This document shows, piece by piece, positions 4,859 through 11,900 of a DNA stretch of 64,000 bases. The notes below the pieces were generated by a model, which made no database searches, had not been told where the DNA came from, and saw only the letters and a program-made list of their open reading frames with translations. The stretch spans positions 21,452,001-21,516,000 of the forward strand of contig OZ004615.1 of the NCBI GenBank assembly GCA_963924565.1. The letters run 5' to 3'. This stretch comes from Ascidiella aspersa. Its lineage: Eukaryota. Each line of letters begins with the position of its first letter. Position 1 is the stretch's first letter. The translations under genes and the position numbers were made by a program.

Positions 4859-5021
4859 ATATAGAGTATGGGAAATTTCTGGTTCGCAACTAAAAAGTTG
4901 CTCAAGCGTTACTGACAATCTATGGCACTTCAACTGAGCACTTGAACAAAAGTAACTAGGACCACAAACAAAGCACAGGAAGGTAGACACTCGGAATTTC
5001 CCATGCTTTAAAAAACTCATA

Positions 5022-5304
5022 ATGAAGCTTTAAAGAACTTTATAAATGTCATAAATCATAGTTAAGCATGAATGAACTTTTCTGTCAACAACAGTGATTG
5101 TCAAAAAAACCTTGGGTTAAAGTGTGTTTGGTTTAGTATTGGCATTGCTTTAAATCAGCACTGGTCATTATGAAGCTTTAAACAACTTTATAAATTTCAT
5201 TAAAATACCTGTCAACAACAGAAACAGTGATTGTCAAAAAAATTTGGAATAAAGTGTGTTCGGTTCAGTATTGGCATTGCTTTAAATCAGCATTGGTCAT
5301 TATG
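5022..5304. repeat. Tandem duplication, about 140 bp x2
   Basis: ATGAAGCTTTAAA...AGTATTGGCATTGCTTTAAATCAGCA.TGGTCATTATG occurs twice. Confidence 0.85.
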
Positions 5305-5909
5305 TAACTATCATTCATAGGCCTGTAAGGTGTAACTAGCAAATGTAGTTTGAACGAGTTTAAGGTGTGGTGTTAATTATTAATGTACCACATTGTCACA
5401 AGGACGAATCTGCTATTAAAATAACAGCAAAAGTGTAGGTGAATTACTTTTAAACTATTCTATTAACTTTTTTTGGGTCTGCTTAACATCATTTTAGTTA
5501 AATATTTAAAAAAAAATATTTGCTGAACCAATTTCCTTTCTTTGATTTATACCTAGATCAACTATTGTACACTGATTTATTTAATTTTTCTTGGTTTGGG
5601 AAAAACATGATATGAGGTCTCAGTTACATCAAAGAAGCAAAAGTTAATGTCGGGTAAAAGTTTGGAGAAGTGCTGCTTTAAAATATTTAAAACATCTTTT
5701 TAAACAAAAGGTTTTCAGTTGAAGTATTATCACTACAGATAAAAGGATAAGACAATTTGAAAATAAATTATAAAATTTTTCTTCAGCAAATTTTTACAAT
5801 TGATACAATGCCAGGCAGCAACAGCTAATTCAATTTACAAAATGCTTTATTAATTCACAAACATATTAATTTGCAAATACAGACTAAAAATATAAAAAGA
5901 TCAGCTTGC

Positions 5910-6042
5910 CTTCGTTCTTTTTGTCCTGCTCTTTGTCACTGGCGCCCTCTGCTGTCCGTCCATCAGCAGAAGAGAGGGCATTAAATTTGTGGCAGACCTC
6001 GAACGCTTGACCGATGGTGCGTACTATCCGCATTGCTTGACT
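5910..6042 (-). CDS. NOS1AP: NOS1AP coding exon 6 ([44 protein letters not shown]), ending at a GC donor
   Basis: 133 nt, CAG acceptor. The AAG|GCAAGC donor gives phase 1, matching exon 7. [18 protein letters not shown] is conserved in CAPON. Confidence 0.92.
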
Positions 6043-6220
6043 CTGGTTCAACAAGGGCAAGGTTACTGAAGCTGCTGCTCAGCCAGGTTGGCATTTAAAA
6101 ACATTTTTTTAGCACTGCTTTTAGTGTAGGGTTAAACAGTGACATTACAAACAAACAAACAAACACACACAATCTATCATGTTTATTGATCTTTGTAAAT
6201 GGCCGCATGTTGTATTGAAT

Positions 6221-6262
6221 TCTTGACAAGCTTTAACACAACCGTGCTTCATCAGGTCAAAG
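6221..6262 (-). ncRNA. Degenerate hammerhead copy (GAAA changed to UAAA)
   Basis: CUUUGAC CUGAUGA A GCAC GGUU GUGU UAAA GCUU GUCAAGA. Confidence 0.6.
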
Positions 6263-6411
6263 AATCTATTTTTTTATTTAAATACATTTTTAAGTACAGC
6301 TTTTAGTGTTCAGTTACAGTGACACATCAAACACACTTTATCATATTTATTAGTCTTTGTAAATGGCCGTTTTAGTCTAATTTTAAACATGGTAATCAGG
6401 TGGCTCTATAC

Positions 6412-7236
6412 CAGTGTTTCCCAAACTTTTTTTCTCGCGTACCATTTTGAGCTTTTGTACAGTGTTCATGTACCACCTAAGTTACATCTGACTAGAATAT
6501 CTCAAACTATAGCTATTTAAGCATATAGATAAGAAAATGAGCATGTAGCTGTATTAGAGTTTAACAACTTCATTCCAGGAAGACTTAAAAGCCATAAATT
6601 AAGCAAAACACAGCAAATAGTTTTAATGCGATGGATGTAGTTGTTTTTTTCTCCACCAGCTGGTTGAGATGTCGTCGGGAGTATGCTTGGTTTCATAGCT
6701 GAATTAGCAAGCGCCTTCATACAAAAAACATATTGCGGAACAGCTTCTCTATTGTGTTCAATAGCTATAAACCCGTAGTTTATGTAGCCTAAGTCTGGCT
6801 GTACTTTCGTTTAGACATGTTCCTAGTATGGTTAAATTAAACAAAATTAAATTCTCACACTATTCCTCTATTTTAAAAGAAATTACAGTAGTTCAATATG
6901 ACTGAAATATCATTATACATATGGCAATACTACACTGCTGCTCTTCAGTTTATTACTACTTACATATTAAACCAGCTAACAATTAACGTTTTATTATCTT
7001 CAACAAGTTAAGTGTTACGTCATAAACGTGCGAAACCTCAAATTAAAGGTAATTAAAACGCAACATTGCAAATACCCAATCTGAAAGTTTTAAAAGTTGA
7101 AAGTTTTCGCAAGTTTATACATATGCTTCAAAAATTTTTTTTTTTAAGTTTTCGCAGATTTATACGTAGTCGCGTACCACCTGAAAGACTCTCGCGTACC
7201 ACCGGTGGTACGCGTACCACAGTTTGGGAACCACTG
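6412..7236 (-). mobile_element. Internally deleted hAT (Buster/Charlie-type) element with an N-terminal transposase remnant
   Basis: TIR CAGTG(T/G)TTCCCAAACT matches 15/16, with a perfect 8-bp TSD CTCTATAC. A frameshifted MSKRKYS/YINYGFIAIEHNREAVPQYVFCMKALANSAMKPSIL starts at 6818 on the minus strand. Confidence 0.92.
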
Positions 7237-7262
7237 CTCTATACAGACAAATTGCATTGAAT

Positions 7263-7304
7263 TCTTGACAAGCTTTCGCACGACCGTGCTTCATCAGGTC
7301 AAAG
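7263..7304 (-). ncRNA. Minimal type I hammerhead ribozyme, intact core
   Basis: Minus strand reads CUUUGAC CUGAUGA A GCAC GGUC GUGC GAAA GCUU GUCAAGA. It has both core boxes, stem II GCAC/GUGC, stem I UUGAC/GUCAA, and palindromic AAGCUU in place of stem III. Confidence 0.8.
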
Positions 7305-7485
7305 AATCTATTTTTTTATTTAAATACATTTTTAGCACAGCTTTCAGTGTAAGGTTAAACAGTGGCACTACAAACAAACACACACACACAATGTATCATG
7401 TTTATTAGTCTTTGAAAAATGGATGTATTTGTCTATTATAAACAGGGTAATCAGGTGACACTATTAAAGACAAATTGTATTGAAT

Positions 7486-7527
7486 TCTTGACAAGCTTTC
7501 ACACAACCATGCTTCATCAGGTCACAG
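7486..7527 (-). ncRNA. Minimal hammerhead ribozyme, core intact, stem II weakened by G-U pairs
   Basis: CUGUGAC CUGAUGA A GCAU GGUU GUGU GAAA GCUU GUCAAGA; 223 nt from the 7263 copy. Confidence 0.7.
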
Positions 7528-7716
7528 TAGCTATTTTTTTTTTTTTTTAGAATTTAATACAATTTGTCTTTATATAGGGCCATCTGATTACCATATTTAT
7601 TGGTGTAAGTGACTTAGCGTAATATTGAAAATTTGGGTCACTGTAGATTGTAGAATTTAGGCTTTCTGTGAAAACGCACTTAAACTAATAAGTGACAAAT
7701 CAACAAAACGTGTCAC

Positions 7717-7825
7717 CTTTTTGGTTGACTTGAAGACATTGCATCTGAAAACGTTGCTTGCCCCATCTCTAGCTATGTAGCTCCAGATTTTTAAGTCATG
7801 GGAGTCGTGGGATACATAGAATATC
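7717..7825 (-). CDS. NOS1AP: NOS1AP coding exon 5 ([36 protein letters not shown])
   Basis: 109 nt, CAG acceptor and GTGACA donor, phase 2/0. Near-identical to the CAPON PTB core. Confidence 0.96.
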
Positions 7826-7899
7826 CTGCACAGCAGTTAAGATATTATATGTGGAGACAACAGATACTAAATTACCATGAAAACAATACATAGTTTATA

Positions 7900-7952
7900 T
7901 GCCCTGATGAATATTACCTGGATAGGTTATCGAAATGTCGGTACAGAATAAA
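7900..7952 (+). ncRNA. Second-family, Penelope-type hammerhead-like motif followed by AATAAA
   Basis: UGCC CUGAUGA AU AUUACCU GGAU AGGUUAU C GAAA UG UC GGUA, then AAUAAA. A decayed homologue lies at about 56445-56500. Confidence 0.5.
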
Positions 7953-8376
7953 TAATTGTCGGAAGAACCCTTTTTACAATTAATATAATGCCTGGCAGCA
8001 ACAGTATATTCAATACATAAACATTATTCAGCAACATTAAAAAGGCAAATACAATGGATCAGAAGGTGTAGGGTAATATCCAAAATATATGTGTAACACA
8101 CAGTGAGGCATAAACTTGCGAAATGTTTTGAAGAGTTAGCATTTAAAGGTTTTAGCTCAACTTGTTGAGAGTCAGACAATAGGTTGGAATCACAAACCAG
8201 TAAATATTATTATTATTACACTAGCCAGTCTGCACCCAGGTAAATTTCTGACCTCTTAAGCAGCATAAGTTGAATAAACTCTTAAAATATGCCATGTTTA
8301 GATTTTGTTTAAAATTCAAAATCTAGTAACAGCATTTTAAAGCACAAAAGTTTCTGTGTAATTAGTTTATGCTTAC

Positions 8377-8435
8377 CTATAAACAGGATCATGCATCACC
8401 AGCAATTTCCGTTCATCCCAGTTCCAGTCTTTTTT
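8377..8435 (-). CDS. NOS1AP: NOS1AP coding exon 4 (KKDWNWDERKLLVMHDPVYR)
   Basis: 59 nt, TAG acceptor and GTAAGC donor, phase 0/2. Matches [20 protein letters not shown]. Confidence 0.95.
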
Positions 8436-8861
8436 CTACAATAAAATAACTTTTAATTTTTTATAACAAAAAACGTGTTGATACATTATACAAGCATTGT
8501 ACAAACAACTAAACAAATTATATAAACATTTTCAAAGATTAAATAAACACCTATATTTCCAGTTTTGCAAATTAAGATAGACTCAGTCTTGTCAAAAAAC
8601 GAAAACATTATGTTGTTTTGCGAAGTTACTGAACTCATTTAGTAACTAAAACATAGTTTTGCAAAAAATATTGTGCATAAGTTTAGGTAGCCAATGTAAT
8701 TTTATTCAATTGGATCTGTTTTAAGACCTATTTAATTTTACATAAATATAAAAAAAATTAAAGCAAAGAGATGCATATAATTAAGCTTGTTTTTTTAAAT
8801 AACAACAGAGAATTTCTCTTATCAAATAGTGGCAGTTATTTAAATTAGGTTCTTTACAAAC

Positions 8862-8954
8862 CCTCTTTTTCTTTCTTAGCGTAACTTTAACCCCTTCCAC
8901 AGAAACAGTCACATTGACTTTTCGCTTTTTGATCTGCTTTGCCTTGAATTCATA
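8862..8954 (-). CDS. NOS1AP: NOS1AP coding exon 3 ([31 protein letters not shown])
   Basis: 93 nt, TAG acceptor and GTTTGT donor, phase 0/0. Matches CAPON [24 protein letters not shown]. Confidence 0.95.
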
Positions 8955-11900
8955 CTAGATAGAAAAAATAATTTTGTAAAAAGGTGTGTAAACAAAATAG
9001 GCATCTTTATATGAAAGGAAAAATTGCCCATTTTATTTTATTTTAATTGGTCAAATAGACTAGTTCAAAGTGTTAAAACTTATATAAAATCGTGTTGGAA
9101 AAAAAATGTTAAGTTACACCAAATTAAACTAATTAGCAGTTGTTTATTAAAATGGGTAGTTAACTAGTTGGTCAATCGAATTGGTTAATTAAAACGTAGC
9201 AACCAAGTTAAGAAAAACAGTGGTATGTTCAGGGTTCAATTTACTAGTGGCTTAGCATAGTATTCCACCCCAGACTTTTAATCAACAAAAATGTGTACTT
9301 TGACACAAAAATATTGCAGCATGAAACAATGTTTGCTTCGGAACCCCCAAAAAATCTTTAAAATAACATATCCCGCTAAAAGAAGACTTGTTGGCAATTG
9401 GCATGGCGTCAGCCAAGGGCACTCAGTAGTGCTTTCACACAACAAAATAGGCACGACATTGAAGTTACTGGAGGACAATGAAAAGCCGGCGAAAGTTTCG
9501 TTTTGGCGACTTGGTCGTGCCTAATGCCCCAAACAAACACATGAAAGTTAGCTTTGCCGAGCGAACGGCAAACACTTTTGCGCTTGAGTTCGCCTTAAAA
9601 GACGCGTATAACGCATATGTAAACGACTAAGGCCTGTCGCGACGTTTCTGCGCATCAGTTCAGCATTTAGGCTAGCAATGGTTTCCCTTGAAAAGGTCGC
9701 AAAACTACACGGGCCGTGTCGTGTCTTCGTTACGGGTGAGCTGAATTCAAGCCTCGGGCTAGCGGGAACAAACCAATCGTGACGTAACAGAAGGCGGCAG
9801 TGTGACGTTGCTGCCGGGTCACCTACGTCATTGCGAGGTTTCCAGGCCGCGGTTAAAAAAGCAATGCATATATCGCCCAACCGTACATGCAGGTAAAAGT
9901 TTTGCGTGTAAGACAACCAGTTTGCATATTAACTGCAGCTAATTTTGCATAGGCATCGTGTTACCTCCTAATATTTAAAGAACATGTTTATACAAATGTT
10001 TAAAGTAAAATAAATTGCAAAGCCAAAAAGGTCGAGTAGATCGACATCATCTTATTAACTGAAGGCGATACAAGTTCGTATCAAATCGTCTTGACTAACA
10101 TGACCTTTTTGGTTTTGCAATTAATTATCAAGCTATATAACAGATCCGTGCATAGAGTGCCCATTTAAATTAAAGCATCAACATTTTTTTCATTTTACGC
10201 CTATTTAGGCATAACTTTTAGTATCGATTTTCACAGGATCATTTTTACAAAAGCGTAGGCTTCAATGTACGTTGGACACGACCTTATAGTAGTATTGCGA
10301 ACACAAATTCGAACGACAAAGTAGGAGAAACGTAGGTTTCGGAGACGCAGTGACGTTTCCGTTCATTACCAAGAAAAACACTTACGCTCAGCGCAACGGG
10401 TATGGCCGCTTATAAAAAGCCTTTTTTAATTCAAACAGCAGCGGGAAATGAAGAGGTGGAAAAAAGGACGACGGTAATGTCGAAGGTGGTCAAAAGGCTT
10501 GCACTTAATAATTCCCGGTAAAATTCGAAAGGCGTTCAAGGCAACCAATATATCGCCTTCGTCGTGACGCCTATGTCCATATTGTTTCCCACGGGAAAGC
10601 GTGGCATCATTAGATCGATAGGCATAAATCCGCAAGGCATTAGAGCTGACACCTTAAAAACGGCATCGAAAGCATTACGAATCGATGCTTTTCAATATAT
10701 GACCATTTTTTGACACATGGAGAATTTTAACGATTAAGAATTGTGATAAATAACGTTTAATCTAAGACTACCAAAAAGTAAAAAAATGTGTTTTTTATGC
10801 TTTAACTTTTTTAGAGTTTTGCACATATTAAATTTTAACGATCAATAATTGTGATATTCTTATTGCGTCTTACTACAACCTCCAACCATTATGCTCCAAA
10901 GAATTGTGATAAATAACGTTTAAATTGATAGTACAAAAAAACTTTTAAAAAATTGTGTTTTTTCAGCTTTAAATCTTTCAGCGTTTTTTTCGTCATAGTG
11001 GCCTTTAGTGTACCTAACAGATGCTTTGTTTACCTAAACAACTATGGCGGGGTGATATCTTACCGCTAACGATGAATAAGAATGTCTTGAACGTGATTTT
11101 TATATTTTTACAGAGACTTTAACAACAAGGTGTGACGGCCATATAAAAACTAGGAGAGTCAACGACCAAGTTCAGCAAACAGTTCGAAGTCTGGACGAAT
11201 TTTATTGTCACGTTAGAGCAATAAGGCGGGTTGTTTTCGGTTGTTCAATCGCGATTAATTGCTGAGGGGCGTAACGGTTGATCCTTCGCGACTATTTACT
11301 TAACGAGCCGCCAAAGCCAAGACTGGCTGGCAAAGTCGAATTAAACGTTGCTTCGTTTTGTGTGTGTGTGTGTGGGGTATGACAGCGTGTTTGGAATTTT
11401 CGGTGATTAGAAGATATAAGTGTAAAACGATCAACACAGAACTGAAATCGCAAAAACGCCAACCCCAAATTGGAAAAAGCAAAACTCTAGTCTAAAACTG
11501 ATATGTTTTTTGTGGAACATACGGCAAACTTTGAAACACAGTACACAGATTTTCGTCACAATTTTTATATAAACATATCATTGTAAGACAGAACATTTGC
11601 TAACGACGGATTGGCAAAATGTATGAATTAATGACAATATGTCGATTTAATCGAATGTCTTTTTTTAAATGTTGGTATCAAAAATGATAAATAATCTTGC
11701 TCAAAATCCACAAACATTAATAAAAACCAAAAATAGTCTCGATTATTTATTGGAAAACAACATTTACGAAACCAGATACTTTTTTACTAGGTAGAAGGCA
11801 GTAACTTAACGAGCGCTGCGACCCAACAGTACAAGAACCGCCCAAAAAATTGACACTAGCAAGACACTAAACAGAAGCTGGACTGCGCAAGACGACACCG

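What the first reader, a model, noticed from the sequence alone, without database searches (positions are those of the whole stretch)
6100..7530. Sense-strand tandem array of minimal hammerhead ribozymes inside a NOS1AP intron (retrozyme-like; predicted 223-nt excisable RNA)
Seen: intron 5 holds three tandem units, each with a type I hammerhead on the NOS1AP-transcribed strand (6221-6262 with a mutated GAAA box; 7263-7304 intact; 7486-7527 core intact). Each has CUGAUGA plus an extra A, a 4-bp stem II, GAAA, and the palindrome AAGCUU instead of stem III. Known: stem III-less palindromic hammerheads occur in Penelope-like element pLTRs and are thought to cleave as dimers. Tandem hammerhead repeats of a few hundred bp (non-LTR retrozymes) give circular RNAs in animals, and an extra A between A9 and G10.1 is a tolerated natural variant. 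Inference: the two adjacent core-intact copies could pair through AAGCUU in the pre-mRNA and cut at 7493/7492 and 7270/7269. This would release a 223-nt monomer that may circularise, linking NOS1AP transcription to retrozyme RNA production or intron cleavage.
Basis: partly seen in the sequence, partly recalled or inferred. Interest (0 to 1): 0.85.

Follow-up and report, generated by a model that had tools for sequence, protein, structure and literature searches.

The report
Decayed Penelope-element hammerhead repeats in intron
The three hammerhead-ribozyme motifs are real, but they are worn copies of the end piece of a common Penelope-like jumping gene that landed in this intron and was then triplicated locally, and nothing shows that they cut the host RNA or make RNA circles.

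Summary
Three minimal type I hammerhead motifs lie on the minus strand at 7520-7493, 7297-7270 and 6255-6228, the last with GAAA changed to UAAA. They sit in a 1.67-kb intron of a PTB/PID-domain gene transcribed from that strand. The motif matches the helix-III-less "min-HHR" described for Penelope-like elements (PLEs) in 2014.

The family is abundant in this genome: 574 exact cores against 0 in the control. Each copy is the last ~130 nt of a PLE whose longer copies carry a GIY-YIG endonuclease reading frame just upstream. The locus has the usual two-armed PLE insertion form, with a short inverted arm at 7600-7549.

The 223-nt period is local. The ~90 nt that complete each unit occur nowhere else in the genome, the array is exactly three units in one phase, and it ends ~90 nt beyond where PLE copies end. 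This favours a DNA-level triplication of insert plus flank.

The copies are decaying: a dead core in unit 3, a weak stem I and a competing hairpin in unit 1, a 49-nt deletion, and a young 825-bp transposon in unit 2. The family shows no covariation.

The scan has reported the same kind of relic elsewhere in this genome.

The parts
7549..7600 (+). Short inverted arm of the original two-armed PLE insertion. It corresponds to family positions ~45-95 and lacks the hammerhead.
   Evidence: It is complementary to 7438-7488 (96% and 81%, pairs I3 and I4). A plus-strand match to query positions 43-93 appears. The same (-,+) two-armed layout occurs in most other loci.
7534..7548 (-). A15 run between the two arms. 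Its last 7 A are the first bases of repeat unit 1.
   Evidence: Seen. Units 2 and 3 are also preceded by A7 plus TAG (alignment).
7318..7540 (-). Unit 1 (223 nt). The PLE 3'-end piece runs 7533-7408, with the hammerhead core at 7520-7493. The locus-private part is 7407-7318.
   Evidence: Stem II has two G-U wobbles. Stem I is about 4 bp, and its 3' strand overlaps the long hairpin formed with the inverted arm.
6276..7317 (-). Unit 2, interrupted by a transposon. The hammerhead core is at 7297-7270, with the best stem I (10 bp with one bulge) and an intact GAAA.
   Evidence: The monomer minimum-free-energy fold gives stems I and II as expected (-14.2 kcal/mol).
6412..7236 (.). An 825-bp non-autonomous DNA transposon inserted in unit 2. 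It has terminal inverted repeats and an 8-bp target duplication, GTATAGAG, at 7244-7237 and 6411-6404.
   Evidence: pair I6. At least 20 full-length copies at 96-99% identity lie elsewhere in the genome, so the insertion is much younger than the array.
6093..6275 (-). Unit 3 (183 nt). The hammerhead at 6255-6228 has G12 changed to U (UAAA), and there is a 49-nt internal deletion. The unit ends in the private part, 50 nt before the 3' splice site.
7717..7827 (-). Upstream exon of the host gene (PTB/PID domain).
   Evidence: Pfam PF00640, E = 1.3e-6, profile positions 81-117. A GT donor follows at 7716.
5905..6042 (-). Downstream exon of the host gene (continuation of the PID domain).
   Evidence: Pfam PF00640, profile positions 118-135, E = 0.016. 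An AG acceptor precedes at 6044-6043.

Best explanation
This is a transposon relic. A 5'-truncated copy of a Penelope-like element (PLE) inserted into this intron in the usual two-armed way, leaving a short inverted arm, a filler A-run and a ~126-nt sense arm that carries the element's minimal hammerhead. Later, a 223-nt stretch of DNA made of that sense arm plus ~90 nt of adjacent intron was triplicated in tandem at the DNA level, by unequal exchange or replication slippage. The copies have since decayed neutrally. In the parent element the hammerhead probably processes multimeric PLE transcripts as a dimer, possibly helped by the element's protein. That step is taken from the literature, not shown here. 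At this locus it most likely does nothing, or at most cleaves rarely at 7270/7269.
For: [quoted passage not shown] (2) The family is abundant: 574 exact cores against 0 in the control, 678 copies of a downstream 18-mer and 1776 BLAST candidates. (3) Longer copies continue upstream into a reading frame with a GIY-YIG domain (PF01541, E = 4.7e-8). That frame occurs as a 5'-truncation series across the genome. (4) Divergent (-,+) pairs dominate. One arm ends at family position ~86-97 and the other at ~122-135. This fits the two reverse-transcription start sites, the optional 30-40-bp 'tail' and the cleavage and extension of both DNA strands reported for a PLE in vitro (PMC11167929). The window shows the same layout. 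(5) The other ~90 nt of the unit are found only at this locus and do not resemble the PLE 3' region. (6) The array is exactly 3.0 units in one phase, and it ends ~90 nt beyond the position where all other copies end. (7) Head-to-tail hammerhead pairs with a 191-251-nt period number only 4 in the genome, including this one. (8) Signs of decay: G12 to U and a 49-nt deletion in unit 3, a young transposon in unit 2, and 3 differences in 28 nt between the local hammerheads against 12-20% for whole units. (9) There is no covariation in stems I and II among 71 copies: 94.4% paired against 94.3% in shuffles. By my hand count, core positions diverge as much (6.4%) as the whole 28-nt motif (6.1%).
Against: No RNA data could be examined, so rare cleavage in the pre-mRNA is not excluded. 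Units 1 and 2 formally satisfy an operational definition of an 'active' non-LTR retrozyme, namely two consecutive units with complete hammerheads (bioRxiv 10.64898/2026.07.22.740005). By my hand count, the hammerhead region is somewhat better conserved across the family (6.1%) than 25 nt downstream (10.0%). This points to constraint on source elements, so the motif is probably functional in the parent. Another locus in this genome with tandem hammerhead units and an upstream inverted copy was noted earlier (s1-787251), so an element-driven origin of such arrays cannot be dismissed. No clear target-site duplication was found; only a possible AATAAA.
Confidence: 0.7

Rival explanations
1. The array was made at the RNA level. 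A 223-nt RNA bounded by two hammerheads was cut out, circularised or kept as a multimer, copied by a PLE reverse transcriptase in more-than-unit fashion, and inserted here. On this view it is a one-off retrozyme-type insertion that is now decayed.
For: Head-to-tail arrays are typical of PLEs and of animal retrozymes (PMC4209133, PMC7229834). An inverted arm sits directly upstream of the array, as at fresh PLE insertions. A similar locus was noted earlier in this genome. Independent same-strand copies ~210 nt apart exist, for example L014, and could serve as sources of such RNAs.
Against: No source or sister copy of the private 90 nt exists in the assembly. The array's 3' end lies in the private part, not at either of the two 3' ends used by every other copy. 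The start and end of the array are in the same phase, which DNA duplication predicts and rolling-circle copying predicts only by chance.
Confidence: 0.15
2. One reading: units 1 and 2 pair through AAGCUU in the host pre-mRNA, both cleave, and a 223-nt RNA is released and perhaps circularised, coupling host transcription to retrozyme RNA production.
For: Both catalytic cores are intact and 223 nt apart on the sense strand. Unit 2 folds into stems I and II as its minimum-free-energy structure. Dimeric min-HHR constructs show some cleavage in vitro (PMC4209133).
Against: That cleavage was low and mostly needed non-physiological Mg2+. In a lizard PLE the hammerhead was protein-assisted, and no RNA-seq reads began or ended at the cut site (PMC11167929). 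Unit 1 has a ~4-bp stem I, and its 3' strand is sequestered by a ~50-bp hairpin with the inverted arm. The predicted best dimer pairs through stem II, not stem III. The 223-nt RNA has no excess structure (z = 0.03). The local hammerheads show no conservation above the rest of the unit. By inference, an efficient self-cleaver in the sense strand of an intron of a conserved gene should be selected against, and one preprint reports fewer retrozymes in introns than in intergenic DNA.
Confidence: 0.07
3. The motifs are chance matches to a loose hammerhead descriptor.
For: No Rfam hammerhead model reports them, and there is no covariation within the family.
Against: Three copies are found where 0 are expected. 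There are 574 genome copies against 0 for the reversed control. The consensus pairs at 94% against 28-50% when partners are slid. All four features that the 2014 paper found beyond its own descriptor are present. The motif resides in a GIY-YIG retroelement.
Confidence: 0.01

Closest known systems
Minimal hammerhead (min-HHR) of Penelope-like element terminal repeats (Cervera & De la Pena 2014, PMC4209133)
   Same: It has CUGAUGA and GAAA boxes, an unpaired base between positions 9 and 10.1, G10.1-C11.1, no helix III and a palindromic 15.2-16.2, so a dimer is needed. It lies in the non-coding end of an element with a GIY-YIG frame. There are hundreds to thousands of mostly single or opposite-strand copies per genome.
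   Different: Stem II is only 4 bp here, against 6-8 bp in several described families. The family is very uniform rather than highly variable. The host is, per earlier scan notes, an ascidian, a group I did not find discussed in the papers read. The reverse-transcriptase part of the parent was not seen.
Animal non-LTR retrozymes (Cervera & De la Pena 2020, PMC7229834; Li et al. 2026 preprint)
   Same: Head-to-tail AT-rich units of a few hundred bp, each with a type I hammerhead. They derive from PLE ends. Two consecutive complete motifs are present.
   Different: Retrozymes carry canonical type I hammerheads with loop-loop contacts and a short helix III, form dispersed multi-copy families and are abundantly expressed as circles. 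Here the ribozyme is the minimal type, the unit exists at one locus only, and expression is unknown.
PLE insertion signature: both strands primed, optional 30-40-bp 'tail' (Frangieh et al. 2024, PMC11167929)
   Same: Divergent two-armed insertions. The 3' ends are bimodal, ~35 nt apart. An 11-bp target duplication was seen at one fresh copy (L064).
   Different: Shown here only by genome copies, not biochemically. The window's copy is old, and its target duplication is uncertain.

Membership tests
PLE minimal hammerhead (min-HHR) | Catalytic boxes CUGAUGA and GAAA in type I order | tested here: met
   Units 1 and 2 are intact. Unit 3 has UAAA.
PLE minimal hammerhead (min-HHR) | [quoted passage not shown] | tested here: met
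   The extra A is present in all three units and in the family consensus. The pair is G-C in unit 2 and G-U in units 1 and 3.
PLE minimal hammerhead (min-HHR) | No helix III; palindromic 15.2-16.2 that allows a shared helix III in a dimer | tested here: met
   GAA-AGCU-U: AGCU is self-complementary. It is invariant or nearly so in 71 copies.
PLE minimal hammerhead (min-HHR) | Located in the terminal non-coding region of an element encoding RT plus a GIY-YIG endonuclease | tested here: inconclusive
   GIY-YIG was found ~200 nt upstream in long copies, with a 5'-truncation series.
PLE minimal hammerhead (min-HHR) | Self-cleavage as a dimer | not testable with these tools
   Needs in vitro transcription. 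Literature reports low activity.
Animal non-LTR retrozyme | Head-to-tail repeats of ~150-450 bp with at least two consecutive complete hammerheads | tested here: met
   Units 1 and 2 are 223 nt apart. Tandem Repeats Finder misses the array because of the transposon.
Animal non-LTR retrozyme | Canonical type I hammerhead with helix I-II loop contacts and a short capped helix III | tested here: not met
   There is no helix III, and stem I is open with no loop 1.
Animal non-LTR retrozyme | The whole unit is a dispersed, multi-copy mobile family | tested here: not met
   The private 90 nt occur only at this locus. Only 4 head-to-tail pairs of similar period exist in the genome.
Animal non-LTR retrozyme | Expressed as linear and circular monomer RNA | not testable with these tools

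The most novel reading that the evidence does not exclude
A retrozyme in the making: a local DNA duplication of a PLE end piece plus host-intron flank has created a dimeric minimal-hammerhead cassette. This cassette occasionally cuts the host pre-mRNA at 7270/7269 and 7493/7492 and releases a 223-nt RNA that could circularise and be copied by PLE reverse transcriptase.
Probability: 0.05. Interest if true: 0.6.

Novelty: new member of a known kind. Interest (0 to 1): 0.15.

Why it matters
As it stands, this is an ordinary transposon relic and matters little. It is a clean worked example of three things: how PLE end pieces with minimal hammerheads litter introns, how the two-armed and tail signatures look in this genome, and how a local duplication can mimic a retrozyme. 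If the minority reading were true, it would show a step by which retrozymes arise from PLE ends and a case of ribozyme cleavage inside a conserved host gene's pre-mRNA.

Tried and rejected
Searches that gave nothing:
- Rfam at E<=10 on 5000-9000 gave no hammerhead family.
- Tandem Repeats Finder gave no rows.
- A PDB sequence search and the ESM Atlas on the exon gave only generic PTB/PID relatives, so the NOS1AP name stays unverified.
- A literature search for tunicate PLE hammerheads found nothing specific.

Steps that failed or were blocked:
There is therefore no read evidence.
- Statements about unit 1's stem I and the A-run rest on what searches had already shown.
The divergence comparison therefore used letters printed by pattern searches and was counted by hand, so it is approximate.
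- A fuzzy-regex scan timed out and was replaced by BLAST.

Ideas considered and rejected:
- The private 90 nt as a degenerate PLE piece. One 20-nt resemblance to family positions 71-91 scored p ~0.02 before correction for 12 tests, which I judged not significant.
- A spliced-leader origin for the 5' ends of short copies. Several copies with the same 5' bases continue upstream into the PLE 3' untranslated region.
- Homodimer cofolding, which did not recover the helix III dimer.

Full report
**What is there**

Reading the minus strand of 5900-7800 shows three copies of one motif. It consists of CUGAUGA, one extra A, a 4-bp stem II with a 4-nt loop, GAAA, and then GCUU followed by GUC. A degenerate pattern finds exactly these three in the 64-kb window, at 7520-7493, 7297-7270 and 6255-6228. 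None is expected in 100 shuffles. The third copy has UAAA instead of GAAA.

No Rfam hammerhead model reports the motifs even at E<=10. I attribute this to the missing helix III, but did not test that.

**Host gene**

The flanking minus-strand exons, 7827-7717 and 6042-5905, match consecutive parts of the Pfam PID profile (positions 81-117 and 118-135). The intron is therefore 7716-6043, and the motifs are on the sense strand. From memory, the peptide closely resembles NOS1AP. The PDB search and the ESM Atlas returned only generic PTB/PID relatives, so the gene name and the label 'intron 5' remain unverified.

**What family it belongs to**

The first ~130 nt of the unit, hammerhead included, is a high-copy repeat:
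- 1776 BLAST candidates.
- 574 exact matches to the core pattern against 0 for the reversed control.
- 678 copies of a downstream 18-mer.

In longer copies the repeat continues upstream through ~200 nt of non-coding sequence into a reading frame with a GIY-YIG endonuclease domain (PF01541, E = 4.7e-8). That frame occurs across the genome as a graded 5'-truncation series, and the longest open frame seen is 488 aa. The repeat is therefore the 3' end of a Penelope-like element (PLE).

The motif has all the features that Cervera and De la Pena (2014, PMC4209133) list for PLE 'min-HHRs': a base between positions 9 and 10.1, G10.1-C11.1, no helix III and a palindromic 15.2-16.2. They reported low cleavage in vitro, and only from dimeric or trimeric constructs or a monomer given a dimer-like helix III.

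**Insertion architecture**

In the ~65 other loci I could read, the dominant layout is a divergent (-,+) pair. One arm ends at family position ~86-97 and the other at ~122-135. The coordinate lists show 8 and 19 such pairs and no close head-to-tail pair. One fresh copy has an 11-bp target duplication (L064).

This matches the biochemistry of a lizard PLE (Frangieh et al. 2024, PMC11167929). That element shows cleavage and extension of both DNA strands, two internal reverse-transcription start sites, and an optional 30-40-bp 'tail'.

The window has the same layout. A tail-less inverted arm at 7600-7549 is complementary to 7438-7488 and matches family positions 43-93 on the plus strand. It is followed by an A15 filler and then by the tailed sense arm.

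**Why the 223-nt period is local**

Each unit is ~126 nt of PLE end plus ~90 nt of other sequence. That other sequence matches only this locus, whether unit 1's copy or unit 3's copy is used as the query. It shows no significant similarity to the PLE end or to the region upstream of it.

Aligning the units shows that the array runs from seven A plus TAG to TTTAAAT exactly three times. It starts inside the A-run and stops 50 nt before the splice acceptor. It therefore ends ~90 nt beyond the point where every other copy of the family ends.

Both facts are what a DNA-level tandem triplication of insert plus flank predicts. Reverse transcription of a multimeric or circular RNA would predict them only by coincidence. 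Genome-wide, head-to-tail hammerhead pairs with a period of 191-251 nt number four, this one included. In the one I could read (L014), the spacers are unrelated.

**State of the copies**

- Units are 79-88% identical to each other and ~83% identical to the family consensus.
- The hammerheads differ at 3 of 28 positions between units, no better than the rest of the unit.
- Unit 3 has lost G12 and 49 nt.
- Unit 2 carries an 825-bp DNA transposon with an 8-bp target duplication. At least 20 other copies of it are 96-99% identical, so that insertion is recent.
- Unit 1 has two G-U wobbles in stem II and a stem I of about 4 bp. The 3' strand of that stem is also part of the ~50-bp hairpin with the inverted arm.
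- Unit 2 alone folds into the expected stems I and II. The best predicted homodimer pairs through the near-palindromic stem II, not through AGCU.
- The predicted 223-nt RNA folds no better than shuffles (z = 0.03).

On 71 copies, the named stems I and II are 94.4% paired, against 94.3% in column shuffles and 28-50% when partners are slid. Only one cell has a double change. The consensus can form the helices, but there is no covariation.

I also used copies picked by their flanks only and counted differences from the consensus by hand:
- The 28-nt core plus stem II differs at 6.1% of sites. Within it, the catalytic boxes differ at 6.4% and stem II at 9.2%.
- A 25-nt stretch downstream differs at 10.0%.

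The inserted copies decay without regard to catalytic positions. The hammerhead region as a whole is somewhat more uniform, which fits constraint on the source elements only.

**Limits**

After that I sent nothing from those places to any search or fold tool and worked beside them. Cleavage and circles are therefore untested. Further genome loci could not be fetched.

**Verdict**

The 'retrozyme with an excisable 223-nt RNA' reading is unsupported: a DNA-level triplication of an old PLE end piece explains it better.

Earlier notes of this scan reached similar conclusions for other hammerhead loci in this genome. I treated them as leads and re-derived the architecture here.

Noticed in passing
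window 6412-7236: An 825-bp non-autonomous DNA transposon with terminal inverted repeats (CAGTGGTTCCCAAACT...) and an 8-bp target duplication, which suggests the hAT type. At least 20 genome copies are 96-99% identical, so the family was active recently.
   Followed up: partly
L003-L071; L064:700-1900: The 3' ends of the PLE copies are bimodal (family position ~86-97 or ~122-135), and paired arms usually have one of each. L064 shows an 11-bp target duplication. This is the 'tail' signature reported for a lizard PLE.
   Followed up: partly
L003-L071: Most short copies begin within a few bases of one point, ~13 nt upstream of CUGAUGA, although the parent continues upstream. This looks like a hot spot for 5' truncation just before the hammerhead. 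The cause is unknown.
   Followed up: no
window 7350-7370, 6305-6325, 6135-6155: The locus-private part of each unit holds a ~20-nt stretch resembling family positions 71-91 of the PLE end (score 23 against 15.7 +/- 2.4 in shuffles, uncorrected p ~0.02). It may be chance or a trace of an older insertion.
   Followed up: partly
genome G000, e.g. C1:15311673-15312254: The GIY-YIG frame of this PLE family shows a graded 5'-truncation series. The longest open frame among scored copies is 488 aa, and no clearly full-length copy was seen.
   Followed up: no
window 7270-7297 and family consensus: Stem II plus its loop is nearly self-complementary. Cofolding therefore predicts a dimer through an extended stem II rather than through the AGCU helix III, which could compete with the active dimer.
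   Followed up: no
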